From: Guillardia theta CCMP2712
Taxonomy: Eukaryota; Protista; Cryptophyta
DNA: 40,130 bases
NCBI RefSeq assembly: GCF_000315625.1
Contig: NW_005434643.1
Location: forward strand, 423,965-464,094
Reading direction: 5' to 3'
In this document: positions 750-39,825 of the stretch, in pieces
How positions within the stretch are numbered: the first letter of the stretch is position 1
Layout: each line of letters opens with the position of its first letter
Position numbers and translations under genes: made by a program
Notes under the pieces: generated by a model
Database searches by the model: none
What the model was told of the DNA's origin: nothing
The model's input: only the letters and a program-made list of their open reading frames with translations

Positions 750-2074
750 GTGGAACAACTTGAACTTGAATTGAGGGGGTGTTCGGCCTGAAACTTGATC
801 TTTGTGTCACGGTCACTGCCGCGCAAGCAAGTCCAACCTACATGGAACAACTTGAAAATTGAGGAGGTGTTCGGCCTGAAATCTTTGTGCCAGTGTCACG
901 CTCCTCCAAGTTTCAAGTTGTTCCATATAGTTTGGAGCAAGTCCAACCTACATGGAACAACTTGAAAATTGAGGGGGTGTAAGAACTCGCCGCCGATAAG
1001 TTCTTGGAGACGGCGAGAAGTTCAGGGTATTGCGTCTCATCGGTAGACGAAGCTCAGCGACTCAGATGGAAGTGGGCTTTGACATAGGTCTGGAATTAAG
1101 GAATCAGGACACGTGGCCAGTGTCCAGGGCGCTGTGCATTGTACGTTGGTGGTGTTGTGTGGTTCTTCTGAGAGTTCTATCATCATCAGTGAATGTGTTA
1201 GAGACCGTGACTGCACAGCTGTGTATCGTTGCCAGGTGAATAAGGTTGGGGTAAGGATCTCAGGTGTACTGAGAGATAGTGTTTGGTCTTGGGTTAAATA
1301 GCCTGATAGAGTCTGGCCAGTGAGGTCACCGGTGGAGGTTGATTCGATTAGCCGGGGGTGTTCGGCCTGAAATCATTGTGTGTCACGCTCCCGGAGTCCA
1401 AGTTTCAAGTTGTTCCATATAGTTTGGAGCAAGTCCAACCTACATGGAACAACTTGAAAATTGAGGGGGTGTTCGGCCTGAAATCATTGTGTGTCACGCT
1501 CCTGCGGCCTGAAATCATTGTGTGTCACGCTCCTCCAAGTTGTTCCATATAGTTTGGAGCAAGTCCAACCTACATGGAACAACTTGAAAATTGAGGGGGT
1601 GTTCGGCCTGAAATCATTGTGTGTCACGCTCCTGCGGCCTGAAATCATTGTGTGTCACGCTCCTCCAAGTTTCAAGTTGTTCCATATAGTTTGGAGCAAG
1701 TCCAACCTACATGGAACAACTTGAAAATTGAGGGGGTGTTCGGCCTGAAATCATTGTGTGTCACGCTCCTGCGGCCTGAAATCATTGTGTGTCACGCTCC
1801 TCCAAGTTTCAAGTTGTTCCATATAGTTTGGAGCAAGTCCAACCTACATGGAACAACTTGAAAATTGAGGGGGTGTTCGGCCTGAAATCATTGTGTGTCA
1901 CGCTCCTGCGGCCTGAAATCATTGTGTGTCACGCTCCTCCAAGTTTCAAGTTGTTCCATATAGTTTGGAGCAAGTCCAACCTACTTGGAACAACTTGAAA
2001 ATTGAGGGGGTGTTCGGCCTGAAATCATTGTGTGTCACGCTCCTGCGGCCTGAAATCATTGTGTGTCACGCTCC
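750..2074. repeat. 106/137-bp satellite with an internal 26-bp-stem hairpin
   Basis: The anchor C(A/T)TGGAACAACTTGAAA recurs at 841, 951, 1443, 1573, 1710, 1847 and 1984. Later units have a 137-bp period (106-bp monomer plus a 31-bp internal duplication CGGCCTGAAATCATTGTGTGTCACGCTCCTG). Confidence 0.95.
978..1353. mobile_element. 376-bp insertion with target-site duplication; solo-LTR-like
   Basis: Interrupts a satellite unit at GAGGGGG|TGTTCGG. GGGGG is duplicated at 973-977 and 1354-1358 (alternatively an 8-bp GGGGGTGT TSD with element 981-1353). One end is TGTAAG; the other end (..TTAGCC) is non-canonical. Confidence 0.65.
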
Positions 2075-2159
2075 CATCGCAAGTCAGCTTTGATGGCCAT
2101 TATGGCCTTCACAGGCGTGGCTGGCCCTCCGAAGCTCAATCATGATGCATCGCCAATAC

Positions 2160-4075
2160 GATATCAAATATCAAAATAAAAAATATCAATGTTGAAAGTT
2201 TCCCGCCACTGTGAACTCTGCGAAGCCGTACAGATATGAGGATGTGCAGCGTTTGACAGAGCAAGACAAGTCAGGTGAGCATTATCTCTTTTTTTCATCG
2301 AAATTATCACGGGAAGAGATCCAAATGACGTGTTCTTGATGCAGGTTGGAATGATTTGCAGCCTTTGGCAACTTGTATGAGATTGATGAACGGGTGAAGA
2401 CTTTGGCAAGTGCCCAACCAATATTACAAACCGGTATCCAGGAGTACGTAGACGTACCAGTAAGCCGCCCAGCATACAAAACTCTCGAGACAATGGCTGC
2501 ATACGAAGGGGGTTTCGACACATCGCAGAACTGTCCCGATGTGAAAAGGTTGTGACATGAAATGGGCACAAACAAAGATAAGTTCAGGACTCGGGAGTCG
2601 ATCAGGTCTAGGCAAAATATTGACATGGTCATCTCACTGCATGGAAGAACATGCAAAACTGAAGGAAAAGCTCAACGGAAAGTTCTAAATGAACAGATAC
2701 AGCGCATTTTAGCAGTCACGGTCGGAGCAGCTCGATGCTTGAAACAAAGATGATCCTCAGTACAATCGAATGATGACAAGTAAGTCCCGTGGTTCGTGAA
2801 GGATTCTTCATCCAATTCTTAAGGATGTGTTGGAACGATGAAACATTTTGCAAATCACCAATTTCATCACACTGACTGATGCATCATGTAAATATTACTG
2901 GTGTGAACTTGCATCAGATTCTGTTCATCGGATGAGCCGCTACCAAGCAGTTGATGTCACAGCAAACAAGAGAGCCGTTTTGAAGATGTTGATATTCCTG
3001 ACCGTAGAGCATTCAAGATGTGGCCACATGTCACATGCTTCTTGGTTAACGCAGATACACCCTCGCCAGGCAAAAGATGGAACGTCTTCAGGATTACAGG
3101 GAGGTCGGTTGTGCTTGTACCCTGCTTGTAACTCTTCTAATAAAGATATGATAACCTGAATGTGCAATTCTGTTTGTTGATTCACAGTGTTTGCGACTCG
3201 ATTGCAATCATCGAGTGCTTGCTCTGTTGAACAAGGCACTCCTCTGTAGAGCCATGCGACAAGAACACTACAGTTGCACGGTAGCATTGCGACACCAAGA
3301 CAGGATTGATCCGATGAACGTCTCATTTATTGATACGCAAAGGCATCATCTGCACATTGCTTCATTTCTGACTAGGTTTCTGTGCAATCGAAATCCTTGT
3401 GAAAATATCATGACAGAGGAAAAATTTGAAGCGAAACGGAAAAATCATCGAAATATGATCATAGATATAGTGATTCATGATCAACAACGGTTCTCTACAG
3501 TCATCTATGCGGGCAGGAACAGTCATCTTCTGTGCAAACGTCTCTTCATGTATCGTTGAACGGTTGAGTGCATGTAAGACTTGCCTCCATAGAAAGGTGA
3601 AGTGCATGAATCCTGACTGTAAGACTAGAAGAATTGAAAGCAAGTGATGACATGAGAACACATATCTAGACAGAAAAGTCGCTCAAGGTACAGCTGGATA
3701 CAAATTTCTCACAAATCACAGTCATGCATTTGAGCGCAACGTGCAACCTACGGCAATTTGAATAAAGGGTCAATCAGAGTTGATTCTGTTCAATGGTGTA
3801 TCGATTATCAATTCCTTACCTGATCATAAAAATTTCATCTTGTCTTCGAAGAATATTTGCAAGTACACCCGCGGATTGTTTGAACCTAGGGTGCATATTC
3901 CATTGCAGGATGGATGATTCAAACCTTGGCCCAACCTGTAGAGTTGAGAAAGAAGCTCGATCATCTCTTACAGGTATGATATGAGATCTTCATCTCATTT
4001 CTATCTCAGTTGGGTTGGATTCGAAGTCTCTCAATATCAAAGTTCATCCTGGTGAGTCAGGAAGGCACCATTTCA
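2160..4075 (-). other. Possible multi-exon or degenerate gene of unknown function
   Basis: Non-repetitive, moderately AT-rich sequence with open stretches on the minus strand (e.g. ORF 2940-3326) and splice-like signals. No recognisable domain and no consistent model could be built. Confidence 0.2.
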
Positions 4076-34316: not shown

Positions 34317-34703
34317 GTACGGTCGGACACTGGTCACCGGGTCCCGGCAATGCGGCACCGTGAGGCGGGCCGGGCGCCGCCGGGGGCCCGGCCCCGCTGA
34401 CAGTGACGGTGAGGGGCTTCGGAACTCGGAAGTCGGAGTACTGCCCGGTCACCGGTTTCAGTGAGTGCGGCGCCCGGGGCCCGGCCCGGCCCCGCCTCTG
34501 AGGCTCCGAGGCTCGGCGGCGAGCTCGCCGCCCCGGCGGAGACCCCGGGCCGGGCGGTCCGACTCTCAGTCACCGGGCCCCGGGCACAGGACTCCGGGAG
34601 TCAGAAGACCGTACCTTGCAGGGTATTTGATGTGGGTAGGAGTAGAGGACTCAGGGATTAGAGGGTAGTAGGGTGGGGGGTGGCAGAAGATATAAGGCGG
34701 AAC

Positions 34704-37250
34704 ATGGCAATGCAGTATGTTATGCTGGCGGCGCTCGTCGCGAGCTCGTCAGCGTTCATGAGCTCGACGATGAGCAGTAGACTGACGGCGAAGAGAGTAT
34801 GGACGAACAAGGCCTCCTATAGGGTGAACGCCCCTGCTGCGCGGAAAGCAGCCGTGCCATTGAGGATGGGTAAGTGACCTTTGTCTTTCCCTGCCATCGT
34901 CCTTTGCGGACAGTCCTGCTCCTCTATTGCCGCCAGCGACCTGACTGACATTGCATCTGTAAAGCTTCCTCTACCGATGCGCAGTACGGCAAGTCCTTCG
35001 TCGTGGATGCGGCGGAGGAGCACACTGCTACAGTGATCTGGCTGCACGGACTAGGAGACTCGGGGAAGGAGTGGACGAAGCTTGCTTCAGCCATCTCCGT
35101 TCCCTGGGCGAAGTTTGTGTTTCCAACAGCGTCAAGACAGCCATCCACCATCTGCGGTGAGAAAGCGAAGCTCCTTGCAAAAGGCCCTGACGTGTTGGTG
35201 GGGAGCAGAGGGAGCGACTATGAACTCTTGGTATGACATTACGGGGCTGGGGGTCAAGGAGCTCAGATCGGACGTGGAGGGGATACAGAAAAGCATTGAC
35301 CACATTCACTCGCTTGTGAAGGCAGAGATTGAGTCCGGTACCCCCAGGTTCTGCCCCTTTCTTTACTTTCCACTTACCCACCTGCGTGGCCTCTGTCCCT
35401 CCTCCCCCTCTCTCTGAACCCCCCCCCAACACCCACCCCCACACCTTCCAGCTTTCCTTTCTCCTCTCCTTCTTCCCTCTCCCTTCCTTGCTGCGAGATA
35501 TCGGTATGTCCGTCTTGGAACGTCCTCACTGTATTTGTAGCGAGCGAATTATCTTGGGAGGATTCTCACAGGGAGGGTGTGTTGCGATCGCGGCCGCCAT
35601 GAAGTTTGAGCAAGAGCTAGGAGGAGTCATGGCTGTAAGCTCGTGGTATCCTCGTGGAGTTGCCGACCAACCCACTCCAGGCAAGCCGTCTGCCTGCTCC
35701 TCCAGCTCCTGCTGTTGCTCCTGTTCTTGTTCCTGCACCGCCTCGAACAACATTTCCCATCCTCTCCTTCTCGTTTCCGTTCGTCTCCTCCTCTCGCAGC
35801 TTGCCCTTCCTCTTCTGACGCCTTGGCAGCAAACAAGAAGCTGCCGGTCATGCTCTGCCACGGAGAGGTCGATCCCATTGCCAAGGTTGAGTGGAGCAGG
35901 AAGGCATTCGAATACCTCCTAGACATGGATATGCCGGCGGAGGGGAACGTCTACCCTGGGGTTGGGCACGAGTTCACCCCCGCGGAAGTGACGGACATGA
36001 AGGAGTTCATCCAGAGGAACTGCCCCCCGACCTTCACCGTGAAGCTTCAGAAGCCCCTGGGCGCTGTGATGGAAGAGGCGGAGTACCCGCAGGGGGCGGT
36101 GAAGATCGGGTCTCTCAAGGAGGGAGGAAACGCGGAGACGAGCGGCAAGCTGCAGGTGGGCGATCAGATCGTCCGGATCAACGGCAAGCTAGTCCGCACC
36201 GAGGGCTTCGACAGGGTCATGGAGACCCTGGTCGCTGCTGAGGGCGAGGTGGAGCTGAAGATGGTGAGGCCGATCCCCGACAGAGACGCAGACTGGGCGA
36301 GTCTGTCAGGGGAGGAGCAGGAGAGGCGGTACAAGGACGCTGGCGGGGTGATCAAGGTGTGTAGCGACGGCCCGTGCAGCAAGCAGGGGGCCAAGAACGT
36401 GATCCGATGGCTCAAGGAGCTCACGCCGGTAGGGAAAGCCAGCGGCATGCTCCCTCCTCCCTCAGCTCTTCTGCTCCCTGACCCCCACGAAAGTGTTTCG
36501 CTCACTCGCTCGCTCGCTCGCTTCTTCTCCTTTCCTCTCCTGCCCTACTTCCCTGCTCCGCTCCCCTCTTCTTCTGCACTTCGCTCTTACTTCCCTGTCC
36601 TCTGCACTCGCCTCCTCTTCCAACTGCTCCTTGCTCTTCTATGCTGCCTTGTCACGTTTCCTTCCAGCCCGAGTTAAGCGTCACTCGATGCGGATGTACC
36701 GGCAACTGCGGCAACGGGCCCAACCTCGTCATCGGAGGCAAGGGAAAGGATGACCGGGTACTCTACGGGGTCAACACAGTTGGAAAGGCAGTGAAGATGC
36801 TTCGGGAGGAATATCAGATCCAGGTATCCGAAGTTGCTGCTGCTGCTGACAATGATGATGATGATGATGACGATGGAGAATGATGATGATGATGATGATG
36901 ATGAAAGTGAAGTGGTAGCACAAGTGATTGCTTTGACCATTTCAACGCTAAGAATGGAGGAGAAGCTCTCGCTGCTTCATGATGGAGCTAACAATCATTC
37001 TGACAGACGGACCCTGTTGTTGTTCAAAGAATCCTCAACCCCTCCAAGATTGCCGAGTTTGGAATTTCCGACGAGCTTGTCAGGCAGGTATGACATCAGA
37101 GTATTACCACATTCCCCCCCTTCCCTTCTCCTCGCTGCTCCCTTCTCCTCCCTTCCTCTTCCTATCTCTTCTTTCGTCTCATTTTCTCTCTCTCAGGGAA
37201 TTCTTGCAAGCGTCACTATCCGCGGGTCTTTCGAGACCAACCGCTTCTGA
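34704..37250 (+). CDS. Predicted plastid-targeted acyl-protein thioesterase/carboxylesterase + PDZ + thioredoxin-like [2Fe-2S] ferredoxin fusion
   Basis: Leader MAMQYVMLAALVASSSA-F plus an S/T/R-rich transit-like stretch. Esterase motifs IWLHGLGDSG, FVFPTA, MNSWYDI, GGFSQGG, HGEVD, YPGVGH. PDZ FTVKLQKPLG..GGNAETSGKLQVGDQIVRING..VELKMVR. Fe-S motif IKVCSDGPC..|..RCGCTGNCGNGPN. Final exons TDPVVVQR..|GILASVTIRGSFETNRF*. Confidence 0.88.
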
Positions 37251-37637
37251 TCCTATAGGACGGCTTAGAAACTTCCGATCTCTTAGTAAATCTCATGTGA
37301 TGATCCGGACCCACCCTCAGGTGTGCCTTGGCGACTCCCGGACGTTCAGTGTCAGGCCCGGACCTGCCAGCTCCCGGAGTACTACCGGCGGTCCGACTCC
37401 AGGCCATGACGGTGTCGGCATCCGAGATCAAGGAGGCAACGGACAGTATGCGCGAGTAGAGTCAGAGGGTCGGGGTGTAGTCAAGCTTCATGGAATACCA
37501 AGGGAACCACCAGACTCAACTCATGTCAACCTCCCCGCGCCTTCAACAGCTCAGCAACCACGCAGCGTGCACCTGTGTCATCTTGTCGCATGTGCCGTCG
37601 GGAGGCTGGCGTTAGCCCATACTGTGCTGGTCTCCAT

Positions 37638-38739
37638 TCACGCATGCCCTCGCAGGTCAACGACCACAATTGTGATGTTGTCTTCGCGTCGATCGATGAG
37701 CTTCTGCAACTCTTCTGCCGGATCCTCTTCTTCCGTCAGGGTGTCGAGACGCCGAGCCACAGCTTCGTTTGTCACGGTTGCCCATAATCCGTCGCTGGCA
37801 ATCACCAGAAACTTGTGCTGCTTCGTGAGCAAGAGCTCCTTTATCTCAGGGTCTGGTATGATGCAATCATCTATGGGCATCCAAGTCTTGTGGCGTAATC
37901 GTGCTTTTGCTTGAGACTTCTGTCGCCTATGCATCGAGACATGGCGAGCCCTCTGACTCGGTTGATGGACCTTCCGTTGATTGTATAGCTTTCAATCGCC
38001 TTGTCGTTGGCTTCGATGCGCTTCCGTTCCTCGGGCTCAGACGGGTCGTGATCAGTGCTCATTGGCATGGGCTCTCCCTCACCGCAGATGATCGCCCGGC
38101 AGTCTCCAGCATTCGCCACGAAGAGACGATCTCCATCGATCACTGCCAGGATTGCTGAGCTGCCATCGTCCCAAGGCTGTGCTAGCGCTCTCTTCTCGGC
38201 CTCAAGGAAGCTGCTTGTCAGGCTGGCTCCCAATGCGCTGTCTTGAGGGCCCGAACTCTGCATGATCTGGTCCCTCAGTATCCCTACGATCTCTGTGCTC
38301 AGCAGCTTGGCAGCGCGATCACCAGAGTGTCCGTCGAAAACCCCGACACGTGTTTGTCGTTGTGGAAGCTAAACTGCGCCACATGCGTATCCTCCATGTC
38401 GAGCCTGTCGCCCCGATCTTCATAAATCCAAAAGCGAGGCAGTGGCCTGCTGCCTTGGCCCGAGTTTGTGGCGGCTGTGGGCTCTGAGGAGATGGCGATG
38501 TTCTGCTCGTCTCTTACCTCTGACTTCAATCCTGAGTCTTCCTGACTCACAGGTGCCCTCACGTCGTCAAGTTGGCTGAGGTCATTTGACTTCGAAAGAG
38601 GACAATCTTCTTGCTCCTGGAAACATCCAATCAACAAATCAAGTCGGCAATCTCTCATCAGCAAACACAGCAAACTGAGTACAAGAGGCTCGCTGCACAG
38701 GCAACATGTGCGTGCGCGACAGAGAGCATCGTGTACCAT
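37638..38739 (-). CDS. Protein phosphatase 2C (PPM) with an apparent frameshift (possible pseudogene or assembly error)
   Basis: RGDRLDMEDTH, (V)GVFDGHSG, DGSSA, LFVANAGDCRA, STDHDP..EERKRIE, LAMSRCIGD, PDPEI, FLVIASDGLW and EDNITIVVV. The motifs are spread over three frames with breaks near 38346 and at 37871-37917. Confidence 0.88.
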
Positions 38740-38899
38740 GTAGTAGCCCTGAGTGCCGAAAAAGGCTGGTAGGATTGGCCGCGGAGAGGAAAACCAGGTA
38801 GCTGTGACTGTCAGATGCTGAGTAAAAATCTCGGCTGAGGTTGGTCGGGGATGAGGGGCCCGGCCTATCCGATTGAATGGCCGCCGCGGTGAGAAGCTC

Positions 38900-39825
38900 A
38901 ATCTGACGCGACCTTCTCGGCAAGTAGTGCCACGGTCACCAGTGCCGGCGGCCCGGGCACCGTCCGAGCCGCTGCCTCCGACCCGGAGGAACCGTTTGCA
39001 GTGCCGGCAAGCTTGAAGCCTGGGCTCGGCGTACTACGGCAGTGACGGTACGGTGCGCGGCGGCTGCCCGGCCGGGTCCCGCGGTCCGCCGTGACGACTC
39101 CCCGCGGGGCGATCCGATATACAAGGGCTGACCCCCGGACTCCGGCGTGATTCCATCATGAGTCAAGACCGTATCGGCATTGCCGGCGGGGGGCGGCACT
39201 TAGTGACTGCGGGCCCGGCCGGCCCGGGCGGCCCAGGCTGGCCCGCTCTCACTGGCGGCTGTGCTTTCGGAAGACTCTGATGATCGGACGATCACCGTCG
39301 AGCCTGGAATGATGACGATCATACGGTAGCTTGTGAGAACTTCGGAAGCCGCATCTCGGACTGTATACTATGATAGTACTATCAGTGATAGCCTACTGAG
39401 CCGGCCGGGGCCGGGCCGCCGGCCAGCCCACCGACGGTCCGATCGCCGCCCAGTGCGTCGAAGTCATGACCCGGACCGTGGCATGACTTCGACGCACTGG
39501 CACTGTTCAGTTATATCGGCCGCGCGTTTCGGGCCGGGTCGGTGACCGCCGAGTCCGATCCGACCGGCCGGGCGTGCCCGGCCACGGTGACCGGCCCCTT
39601 GCCCTGGGTGAGTAGTCTCTCCGCTCGGAGTTTCTAACGCTGGGTGCCACTGTGATGATGCGGCCTAACGGTGACTATGCTACCGTAACTGCCAGTGTCG
39701 GAAAGCCTCAGTTAGCGCCTCCGCCCCGGGGAGTCCGAGGCTCTATTTCCGAAGCCTTTTCCGAGTCATCGTCAGTGACAAGGGTTGTCATAGTTGGCAA
39801 ACAAAAAGCCTCTGGTAGCACTGCC
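38900..39825. promoter_or_regulatory. GC-rich intergenic / divergent promoter region
   Basis: Upstream of PP2C (-) and of a likely ATG at 39826 (+). Same word composition as 15171-16137, 19660-20520 and 33975-34620. Confidence 0.5.

What the first reader, a model, noticed from the sequence alone, without database searches (positions are those of the whole stretch)
34704..37250. Plastid-targeted thioesterase-PDZ-[2Fe-2S] triple fusion
Seen: an APT1/LYPLA-like alpha/beta hydrolase with a full Ser-Asp-His triad, a PDZ domain and a thioredoxin-like ferredoxin motif (C-x4-C ... C-x3-C-x2-GP). The hydrolase C-half, the PDZ and the first Cys pair lie in one uninterrupted exon (about 35800-36428), so the fusion is not a gene-model artefact. 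The leader is a signal peptide ending SSA-F plus a transit-like stretch, the known stromal-import signature of complex red plastids. Known: APT1-type enzymes are normally single-domain deacylases or lysophospholipases. Inference: a redox- or Fe-S-sensing, PDZ-scaffolded deacylase in the plastid, hinting at redox-controlled protein S-deacylation or lipid remodelling there. I do not know this architecture from any described protein.
Basis: partly seen in the sequence, partly recalled or inferred. Interest (0 to 1): 0.75.

Follow-up and report, generated by a model that had tools for sequence, protein, structure and literature searches.

The report
Cryptophyte plastid esterase-PDZ-ferredoxin fusion protein
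This alga (Guillardia theta) has one real, conserved gene that joins a fat- or protein-deacylating enzyme, a protein-docking domain and a probable iron-sulfur domain and sends the product into the chloroplast; I found this combination only in cryptophyte algae and described in no paper I could search.

Summary
Window 34704-37250 (+) is one 8-exon gene of Guillardia theta encoding 508 aa. It has four parts:
- a bipartite plastid leader (signal peptide ...SSA|F plus a basic, Ser/Thr-rich transit peptide);
- a complete APT1/APT2-type serine hydrolase (E 1.7e-44 to human APT2; Ser/Asp/His invariant);
- a canonical PDZ domain;
- a diverged thioredoxin-like [2Fe-2S] ferredoxin domain (C-x4-C-x26-C-x3-C-x2-GP) followed by a conserved 46-aa tail ending -NRF.

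The hydrolase C-half, the PDZ and the first Cys pair share one exon, 35830-36428. The start is corrected from about 35800 because intron 4 is GC-AG. Full-length transcripts from at least 12 related cryptophytes carry the same contiguous architecture, including the exon with the second Cys pair.

The ferredoxin domain is the most conserved part: 86% mean pairwise identity against 69% for the hydrolase. A HMMER scan of 1.84 billion representatives found the PDZ-ferredoxin-tail module only in this family. The deposited model (GUITHDRAFT_94393, partial) is truncated and mis-spliced, which hides the fusion.

Cluster binding, substrate and redox control are inferred. Partial precedents exist: DGAT3 (acyl-lipid enzyme plus the same ferredoxin type) and ENH1 (plastid PDZ plus rubredoxin). 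I rate it a new architecture built from known domains, of moderate interest.

The parts
34704..34869 (+). Exon 1: start codon and bipartite leader. The signal peptide covers about aa 1-17 (34704-34754) and ends SSA. Phe at +1 is codon 34755-34757. A basic Ser/Thr-rich transit peptide follows.
   Evidence: Translation. The same ...A|F layout appears in orthologues. P0016 (the NCBI model) starts here.
34965..35156 (+). Exon 2: start of the mature protein and hydrolase N-terminus, with the oxyanion-region motif WLHGLGD.
   Evidence: Abhydrolase_2 44.3 bits, profile 3-56. tblastn of P0001 gives 92% identity.
35209..35347 (+). Exon 3: hydrolase segment equivalent to the APT lid-loop region (MNSWYD...).
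   Evidence: Abhydrolase_2 profile 60-102. Translation.
35541..35680 (+). Exon 4: nucleophile elbow GFSQGG (Ser codon 35566-35568). It ends before a GC donor at 35681.
   Evidence: Abhydrolase_2 41.7 bits. The window encodes RGVADQPTP in frame after SSWYP, matching the invariant R204, G205, D208 and P210 of the family.
35681..35829 (+). Intron 4, GC-AG. The NCBI model instead uses GT at 35654 and AG at 35799, which gives a non-conserved insert.
   Evidence: Comparison of P0016 with P0001 and the other orthologues. Transcript mapping.
35830..36428 (+). Exon 5: hydrolase C-half (Asp 35871-73, His 35967-69), PDZ (about 36039-36266), linker, and the first Cys pair (C-x4-C, 36360-36377) of the ferredoxin domain.
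   Evidence: One open frame. Abhydrolase_2 and PDZ both match in this single exon. 96% aa identity to P0001.
36668..36823 (+). Exon 6: second half of the thioredoxin-like ferredoxin domain. The CGCTGNCGNGP motif has ligand Cys at 36695-97 and 36707-09, plus an extra invariant Cys at 36689-91.
   Evidence: Translation. PF01257 profile 105-127. The transcript L001 joins this segment directly to exons 5 and 7.
37007..37087 (+). Exon 7: first part of the conserved C-terminal tail (TDP...DELVRQ).
   Evidence: Translation. Alignment.
37197..37250 (+). Exon 8: end of the tail (GILASVTIRGSFETNRF) and the stop codon at 37248-37250.
   Evidence: Translation. -NRF is invariant in 12 orthologues.

Best explanation
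A nucleus-encoded, plastid-stroma-targeted serine hydrolase of the APT/LYPLA (Abhydrolase_2) family. It carries a lineage-specific C-terminal module: a canonical PDZ domain, a thioredoxin-like ferredoxin domain and a conserved 46-aa tail ending -NRF.

Shown: the gene structure, the domain composition, the intact triad, the four invariant cluster-type Cys, the conserved bipartite leader, and conservation of the whole architecture across cryptophytes.

Inferred:
- The protein is imported through the ER and periplastid route into the stroma.
- The hydrolase cleaves acyl ester or thioester bonds (lysolipids, acyl thioesters or S-acylated proteins).
- The ferredoxin domain binds a [2Fe-2S] cluster through C390, C395, C422 and C426 (P0001 numbering). 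It reports redox or Fe-S status, or accepts electrons, much as the same domain type sits on the plastid acyl-lipid enzyme DGAT3.
- The PDZ docks the enzyme on the C-terminus of a partner or substrate, or on its own -NRF tail.
For: Gene model:
- Eight exons total 1527 nt, giving 508 aa, the same length as P0001. Each exon translates without a stop.
- All exons are collinear with the transcript L001.

Hydrolase:
- phmmer gives 1.7e-44 to human APT2 and 8e-40 to APT1 over the whole fold, with GFSQGG, HGE-DP and the catalytic His aligned.
- The Foldseek top hits are 5syn, 6bje and 1fj2.
- S175, D227 and H259 are invariant.

PDZ:
- PF00595 at 2e-8 to 1e-10.
- Foldseek matches PALS1 and GRIP1 PDZ domains at rmsd 1.5-2.4 Å.

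Ferredoxin:
- PF01257 matches 3 of 3 orthologues at E 2e-4 to 4e-3, across both Cys pairs.
- A five-sequence profile against the PDB gives a best E of 0.0012 (HydC). Nearly all 50 rows are NuoE, NDUFV2, HoxE, HydC, FdsG or Aquifex Fd4.
- NCBIfam nuoE_fam matches 5 of 5 members.
- The ESM Atlas top clusters all carry PF01257.
- The predicted secondary structure runs strand-helix-strand-strand-strand-helix.
- This is the most conserved domain, at 86% mean pairwise identity.

Leader: conserved ...A|F. The +1 Phe rule separating stroma from periplastid compartment is described in PMC12136025.

Precedent: AtDGAT3 binds a [2Fe-2S] cluster through C-x4-C-x27-34-C-x3-C (PMC6250708).
Against: - No single ferredoxin match passes a curated threshold (PF01257 scores 20.5 bits against a cut-off of 24.8).
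- The AlphaFold models are mediocre (pLDDT 68 for the whole protein, 60 for the domain alone). Foldseek found nothing for the isolated domain, and VIA-align gave only Z 4-4.5 to thioredoxins.
- The Cys spacer is 26 residues, one shorter than the range quoted for DGAT3 and its homologues.
- No G. theta cDNA was examined. Support for the splice pattern comes from a relative with 85% nucleotide identity.
- No signal-peptide or transit-peptide predictor was available.
- Substrate and regulation are entirely untested.
Confidence: 0.6

Rival explanations
1. The Cys-rich thioredoxin-fold domain no longer binds an Fe-S cluster. It acts instead as a dithiol/disulfide switch, a zinc site or a purely structural interaction domain.
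For: The matches to PF01257 are sub-threshold. There is a fifth invariant Cys, C420, two residues before a ligand Cys. The isolated-domain model matches plain thioredoxins only weakly.
Against: All four ligand positions, and the Gly-Pro after the last Cys, are invariant in every member, including the most divergent one, P0205. They align exactly with the ligands of HydC and HoxE-type proteins. Near-invariance of the residues around the Cys fits a cofactor site.
Confidence: 0.2
2. The enzyme acts mainly in plastid acyl-lipid metabolism, as a lysolipid or acyl-thioester hydrolase working alongside TAG or galactolipid turnover. It would not be a protein S-deacylase. The ferredoxin domain would play the same, still unknown, role as in DGAT3.
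For: The APT/LYPLA family includes lysophospholipases and bacterial carboxylesterases (PDB titles). DGAT3 is a soluble plastid acyl-lipid enzyme with the same ferredoxin type and possible acyl-CoA hydrolase activity (PMC6250708). The abstract of bioRxiv 10.1101/2021.01.17.426997, listed, reports that Chlamydomonas DGAT3 localises to the chloroplast.
Against: A PDZ domain normally reads protein C-termini, which points to a protein partner or substrate. No specific sequence kinship to DGAT3 was tested, because no DGAT3 sequence was available by reference.
Confidence: 0.4
3. Gene-model artefact: two neighbouring genes (a hydrolase and a PDZ-ferredoxin protein) were wrongly merged.
For: The NCBI model GUITHDRAFT_94393 stops at ...NCPPT and is flagged partial.
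Against: The hydrolase Asp and His, the PDZ and the first Cys pair sit in one open exon. At least 12 independent transcript-derived proteins of 448-517 aa carry all the domains.
Confidence: 0.02
4. The protein resides in the periplastid compartment or the ER lumen rather than the stroma.
For: Localisation was not measured, and no prediction software was available.
Against: [quoted passage not shown] It is the feature that separates stromal from periplastid pre-proteins in cryptophytes and diatoms (PMC12136025).
Confidence: 0.1

Closest known systems
Human acyl-protein thioesterases APT1/APT2 (LYPLA1/LYPLA2; PDB 1fj2, 5syn, 6bje)
   Same: The whole alpha/beta-hydrolase domain aligns at 35-38% identity, with the same GFSQGG nucleophile elbow and the same Asp and His positions.
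   Different: APT1 and APT2 are single-domain cytosolic proteins of about 230 aa. This protein has a plastid leader and about 230 extra C-terminal residues (PDZ, ferredoxin, tail). It also has a family-specific invariant Cys four residues after the nucleophile.
Plant and algal DGAT3 (soluble diacylglycerol acyltransferase with a C-terminal thioredoxin-like [2Fe-2S] domain; PMC6250708)
   Same: An acyl-lipid-active soluble enzyme joined to a C-terminal thioredoxin-like ferredoxin domain. The Cys pattern is C-x4-C-x(27-34)-C-x3-C. It has a chloroplast transit peptide, and the role of the cluster is unknown.
   Different: The catalytic part is unrelated (it is not Abhydrolase_2), and there is no PDZ domain. 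The spacer here is 26 residues. Direct sequence kinship of the two ferredoxin domains was not tested.
ENH1-type chloroplast PDZ-rubredoxin proteins (At5g17170; PMC6634066)
   Same: A plastid protein that combines a PDZ domain with a Cys4 iron redox domain.
   Different: The iron domain is rubredoxin (mononuclear Fe), not a thioredoxin-like [2Fe-2S] domain. There is no hydrolase domain. It occurs in the green lineage.
Thioredoxin-like [2Fe-2S] ferredoxins and subunits (NuoE/NDUFV2, HoxE, HydC, FdsG, Aquifex Fd4; PF01257/cd02980)
   Same: The four Cys ligands, the Gly-Pro after the last Cys and the predicted fold order align.
   Different: These are subunits of NADH dehydrogenase, hydrogenase or formate dehydrogenase complexes, or free ferredoxins. 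The domain here is very diverged (sub-threshold) and fused to an esterase. G. theta's ordinary NDUFV2-type gene lies elsewhere, on contig C15.

Membership tests
Abhydrolase_2 / APT-LYPLA serine hydrolases (PF02230) | Significant full-length match to the family profile and to solved members | tested here: met
   PF02230 scores 177 bits over profile 4-215 of 217 in P0001. The window exons cover profile 3-215 in order. phmmer gives 1.7e-44 to APT2.
Abhydrolase_2 / APT-LYPLA serine hydrolases (PF02230) | Catalytic Ser (G-x-S-x-G), Asp and His present and conserved | tested here: met
   S175, D227 and H259 are invariant in 12 orthologues and align with the APT2 triad motifs. The window codons are 35566-68, 35871-73 and 35967-69.
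Abhydrolase_2 / APT-LYPLA serine hydrolases (PF02230) | Esterase or thioesterase activity | not testable with these tools
   Needs an enzyme assay.
PDZ domain (PF00595) | Profile match above the curated cut-off, and the PDZ fold | tested here: met
   34.9-42 bits against a cut-off of 23.2. Foldseek matches PALS1, GRIP1, PSD-95 and MPP7 PDZ domains at E about 1e-6 and rmsd 1.5-2.4 Å.
PDZ domain (PF00595) | Carboxylate-binding loop (x-hydrophobic-G-hydrophobic, preceded by a basic residue) | tested here: met
   K-P-L-G-A is invariant (K287, P288, L289, G290) at the start of the domain. Ligand binding itself was not tested.
Thioredoxin-like [2Fe-2S] ferredoxin (PF01257 / cd02980) | Profile match above the curated cut-off | tested here: not met
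   17.6-21.6 bits against a cut-off of 24.8 (E 2e-4 to 4e-3). The matches are consistent but sub-threshold. I treat the domain as a remote member of the superfamily, not as a certified Pfam member.
Thioredoxin-like [2Fe-2S] ferredoxin (PF01257 / cd02980) | Four Cys in a C-x4-C ... C-x3-C pattern, aligned to known ligands | tested here: met
   The pattern is C390-x4-C395-x26-C422-x3-C426, invariant in the family. The Cys align with the ligands of HydC 8a6t_C, 2auv and 7p5h_C.
Thioredoxin-like [2Fe-2S] ferredoxin (PF01257 / cd02980) | Thioredoxin-like fold | tested here: inconclusive
   The predicted secondary-structure order fits. The VIA-align top rows are thioredoxins, but only at Z 4-4.5 on a model with pLDDT 60. 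Foldseek found nothing.
Thioredoxin-like [2Fe-2S] ferredoxin (PF01257 / cd02980) | Binds a [2Fe-2S] cluster | not testable with these tools
   Needs UV-vis/EPR and Fe/S analysis.
DGAT3 | DGAT3-type N-terminal acyltransferase region plus the ferredoxin domain | not tested
   No DGAT3 sequence was available by reference. The N-terminal domain here is plainly Abhydrolase_2, so it is not a DGAT3 orthologue. The likeness is in design only.
Stromal pre-proteins of complex red plastids (bipartite leader) | Signal peptide with a small-x-small cleavage site, an aromatic residue at +1, and a basic, hydroxylated, acid-poor transit peptide | tested here: met
   In the window...SSA|F is followed by about 38 residues with 8 Lys/Arg and no Asp/Glu. 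The same layout occurs in 7 full-length orthologues. The rule is stated in PMC12136025. It was checked by eye only; no SignalP or ASAFind run was possible.

The most novel reading that the evidence does not exclude
The first APT-family deacylase placed under direct control of an Fe-S cluster. In the plastid stroma, the redox or occupancy state of the [2Fe-2S] domain would gate the hydrolase. One possible route is the PDZ domain catching or releasing the protein's own invariant C-terminal -NRF tail as a latch. That would couple acyl-lipid or protein S-acyl turnover to photosynthetic redox or iron status. Together with DGAT3, it would point to a general and so far unexplained link between thioredoxin-like [2Fe-2S] domains and plastid acyl metabolism.
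Probability: 0.15. Interest if true: 0.75.

Novelty: new variant of a known kind. Interest (0 to 1): 0.5.

Why it matters
Each domain is well known, but I found the combination nowhere else.

- The ferredoxin domain and tail are under the strongest constraint in the protein, so they are central to function rather than decoration.
- If the cluster is real, this is a second, independent case (after DGAT3) of a thioredoxin-like [2Fe-2S] domain joined to an acyl-handling enzyme in a plastid. A soluble, easily assayed esterase could make the unexplained role of that domain testable.
- It would also be a rare case of a canonical PDZ domain at work inside a plastid.
- The G. theta reference annotation truncates and mis-splices this gene, so proteome-based surveys of that genome will miss the architecture.

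Tried and rejected
1. Folding the ferredoxin-plus-tail part alone (pLDDT 60) and searching it with Foldseek gave no usable match. VIA-align gave only weak thioredoxin rows at Z 4-4.5. This is not decisive.

2. The one big HMMER search used PDZ + ferredoxin + tail as query. PDZ-only proteins filled the 150 listed rows. It shows that the combined module is confined to this family, but it says little about the nearest relatives of the ferredoxin domain on its own.

3. Word searches with the ferredoxin part returned only fragments of the same family.

4. A pattern scan of 185,579 prokaryotic genomes with the ferredoxin profile found no relative.

5. I followed up a hit to the tail on contig C212 as a possible independent 'tail domain'. 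I rejected that reading: it is a 2.06-kb segmental duplicate of window 36853-38912 at 92.8% identity. It carries only exons 7-8 and part of the neighbouring PP2C gene.

6. I looked for the tail docking into the PDZ domain in the model. The tail has pLDDT below 50, and the same isolated bridge residues appear when the PDZ is absent, so there is no support either way.

7. Pfam on the nearest single-PDZ proteins (P0161, P0164 and others) found no rubredoxin or ferredoxin partner.

8. Paper searches for the architecture or the locus tag returned nothing.

9. The spliced G. theta protein was never assembled or searched as one sequence, following the operators' rule. Exons were searched by reference, and full-length work used the natural transcript L001/P0001 of a relative.
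Full report
**Organism and locus.** The window belongs to Guillardia theta CCMP2712. The NCBI protein 'hypothetical protein GUITHDRAFT_94393, partial' (P0016, 281 aa) is 100% identical to the translated exons. The window is G000:C31:423965-464094.

**Gene model.** I translated each candidate exon by reference. I also mapped a 1574-nt transcript-derived contig of a related cryptophyte onto the window (L001, encoding P0001, 508 aa; 85% nucleotide identity, and 96% amino-acid identity in exon 5). The mapping is collinear and gives eight exons:

| Exon | Coordinates |
|---|---|
| 1 | 34704-34869 |
| 2 | 34965-35156 |
| 3 | 35209-35347 |
| 4 | 35541-35680 |
| 5 | 35830-36428 |
| 6 | 36668-36823 |
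| 7 | 37007-37087 |
| 8 | 37197-37250 (stop at 37248) |

- The exon lengths sum to 1527 nt, giving 508 codons plus the stop, the same length as P0001.
- All introns are GT-AG except intron 4 (35681-35829), which is GC-AG.
- The GC donor is supported by conservation. The window encodes RGVADQPTP in frame after SSWYP, and R204, G205, D208 and P210 are invariant in the family.
- The NCBI model instead splices 35654 to 35799, which inserts a non-conserved PCPSSSDALA. It stops at ...NCPPT and is flagged partial. The deposited annotation therefore hides the PDZ and ferredoxin parts.
Full-length analyses used natural transcripts of relatives.

**The observation.** It is confirmed.
- Abhydrolase_2 matches exons 2, 3, 4 and 5 in profile order.
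- PDZ (PF00595, E 2.1e-8) and the hydrolase C-terminus both lie in exon 5.
- That stretch is open from 35643 to 36677. The co-linearity of hydrolase, PDZ and the first Cys pair therefore does not depend on any splice decision.
- The Cys motifs read VCSDGPC in exon 5 and CGCTGNCGNGP in exon 6.

**Hydrolase.**
- The domain aligns over its whole length with human APT2 (E 1.7e-44) and APT1 (8e-40). GFSQGG, HGE-DP and the catalytic His are superposed.
- A whole-protein AlphaFold model (pLDDT 68, pTM 0.69) retrieves APT2 and APT1 first. Bacterial carboxylesterases, LYPLAL1 and SOBER1 follow.
- S175, D227 and H259 are invariant in 12 orthologues.
- G. theta has several other Abhydrolase_2 paralogues but only one copy of this fusion.

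**PDZ.** The domain is of the canonical, non-permuted type. PF00595 matches more strongly than PDZ_2. Foldseek matches PALS1, GRIP1-PDZ6, PSD-95 and MPP7 at rmsd 1.5-2.4 Å. The carboxylate-binding loop K-P-L-G-A is invariant.

**Ferredoxin domain.** No single match is strong, but every line of evidence points the same way.
- PF01257 matches all three orthologues tested, across both Cys pairs (profile 67-128), at E 2e-4 to 4e-3. The scores of 17.6-21.6 bits fall below the 24.8-bit cut-off.
- A single sequence against the PDB gives HydC, a HoxE-like subunit and Fe-hydrogenase gamma as its top three hits, with all four Cys aligned.
- A five-sequence profile of the domain (A3, built from natural transcript slices) improves the best E to 0.0012. 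About 45 of its 50 rows are NuoE, NDUFV2, HoxE, HydC, FdsG, NfnC or Aquifex Fd4.
- NCBIfam nuoE_fam matches 5 of 5 members.
- The ESM Atlas top clusters all carry PF01257, at scores of 0.85-0.86. This is a lead only.
- IMG's pipeline names some environmental copies 'predicted esterase/(2Fe-2S) ferredoxin'.
- The predicted secondary structure is strand-helix-strand-strand-strand-helix.
- The isolated-domain model is poor (pLDDT 60). Foldseek found nothing, and VIA-align gave thioredoxins only at Z 4-4.5.
- The Cys pattern is C-x4-C-x26-C-x3-C. The pattern quoted for DGAT3 and its homologues is C-x4-C-x27-34-C-x3-C (PMC6250708).

I conclude that this is a remote member of the thioredoxin-like [2Fe-2S] ferredoxin superfamily. 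Cluster binding is inferred.

**Conservation.** Across 12 full-length orthologues, the mean pairwise identity by region is as follows:

| Region | Mean pairwise identity |
|---|---|
| Ferredoxin domain | 86% |
| C-terminal tail | 77% |
| Hydrolase | 69% |
| PDZ | 59% |
| Leader | 27% |

In the ferredoxin domain, 64% of columns are invariant. The 46-aa tail ends in an invariant -NRF and matches no Pfam family.

**Targeting.** Exon 1 reads a hydrophobic signal peptide ending SSA|F. About 38 residues follow with 8 Lys/Arg and no Asp/Glu, ahead of the conserved mature start. Every full-length orthologue has the same ...A|F junction: P0001, P0005, P0010, P0012, P0166, P0181 and P0205. An aromatic residue at +1 of the transit peptide distinguishes stromal from periplastid pre-proteins in cryptophytes and diatoms (PMC12136025). 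No predictor or experiment was available.

**Distribution.**
- The word search with exon 5 found 17 proteins, all of this family.
- The HMMER scan of 1.84 billion representatives with PDZ + ferredoxin + tail found two full-span clusters (P0002 and P0018, whose full-length member P0205 has 517 aa) plus fragments. All other rows matched the PDZ part only.
- Searches with the ferredoxin part alone found only family fragments.
- Prokaryotic genomes gave nothing.
- The named sources are Guillardia, Geminigera (P0010) and Teleaulax (P0181). The remainder are unnamed marine and freshwater metatranscriptomes.
- I therefore regard the architecture as cryptophyte-specific as far as these tools can see. 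The absence of more distant versions in other algae is not proven.

**Literature.** No paper combined 'thioredoxin-like ferredoxin' with PDZ. None combined acyl-protein thioesterase with chloroplast and PDZ. None cited the locus tag. Two partial precedents exist.
- DGAT3 is a soluble acyl-lipid enzyme with a chloroplast transit peptide and a C-terminal thioredoxin-like domain shown to hold a [2Fe-2S] cluster of unknown role (PMC6250708). The abstract of a preprint listed reports chloroplast localisation for the Chlamydomonas enzyme.
- ENH1-type proteins are chloroplast proteins that combine a PDZ domain with rubredoxin (PMC6634066).

**Mechanism (inferred).**
- The pre-protein enters the ER, crosses the periplastid membranes and reaches the stroma.
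- The mature protein of about 450 aa hydrolyses acyl ester or thioester bonds through the Ser-Asp-His triad.
- The C-terminal module supplies regulation or partner binding. The [2Fe-2S] site would sense or transmit redox or Fe-S status. The PDZ would bind the C-terminus of a partner or substrate, or the protein's own -NRF tail.
- I put 0.6 on the overall statement (architecture, plastid location, active hydrolase, cluster-binding domain). I put about 0.15 on the specific redox-latch version.
- A lipid substrate is at least as likely as protein S-deacylation.

**Verdict.** This is a real gene with a correct observation. It is a new domain architecture built from known domains, confined to one algal lineage, and its biochemistry is untested. 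Interest is moderate.

Noticed in passing
window 36853-38912; L010 (G000:C212:34500-41500) 1516-3548: A 2.06-kb segmental duplication at 92.8% identity, in opposite orientation. It copies only the last two exons of this gene and the 3' part of the neighbouring PP2C phosphatase gene to contig C212. Its boundary lies in the trinucleotide repeat of intron 6. The C212 copy of this gene is therefore a truncated fragment.
   Followed up: yes
window 35654-35829 and 36030-36040: The deposited NCBI model GUITHDRAFT_94393 is mis-spliced at intron 4. It uses a GT-AG pair instead of the conserved GC-AG intron 35681-35829. It is also truncated at ...NCPPT, so the reference proteome lacks the PDZ and ferredoxin parts.
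   Followed up: yes
window 36827-36912: A (GCT)n/(GAT)n trinucleotide microsatellite lies inside intron 6, directly after the exon 6 donor.
   Followed up: partly
window 34330-34611: A GC-rich stretch (63% GC in that kilobase) just upstream of the start codon, with several nested imperfect inverted repeats (arms 29-39 nt, 72% complementary). It may be a repetitive or mobile element, or a promoter-region structure.
   Followed up: no
P0001 residue 179 (window codon 35578-35580) and residue 222: An invariant, family-specific Cys sits four residues after the nucleophile Ser (GFSQGGC); human APT2 has Ala there. A second invariant Cys lies in LCHG, just before the catalytic Asp. They could form a thiol redox switch near the active site. 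Distances in the model could not be inspected.
   Followed up: no
P0161 (219 aa), P0164 (295 aa): The nearest single-PDZ relatives (44% identity, same KPLG...EE start) carry an unrelated conserved C-terminal region (…RFFGIFST…SYSCNVSAT…) that has no Pfam match. This looks like another uncharacterised algal PDZ protein family.
   Followed up: partly
G000:C15:353572-354125 (L011/L012): The only above-threshold PF01257 gene in the G. theta genome is a two-exon NDUFV2/NuoE-type gene. It is unrelated to the fusion.
   Followed up: partly
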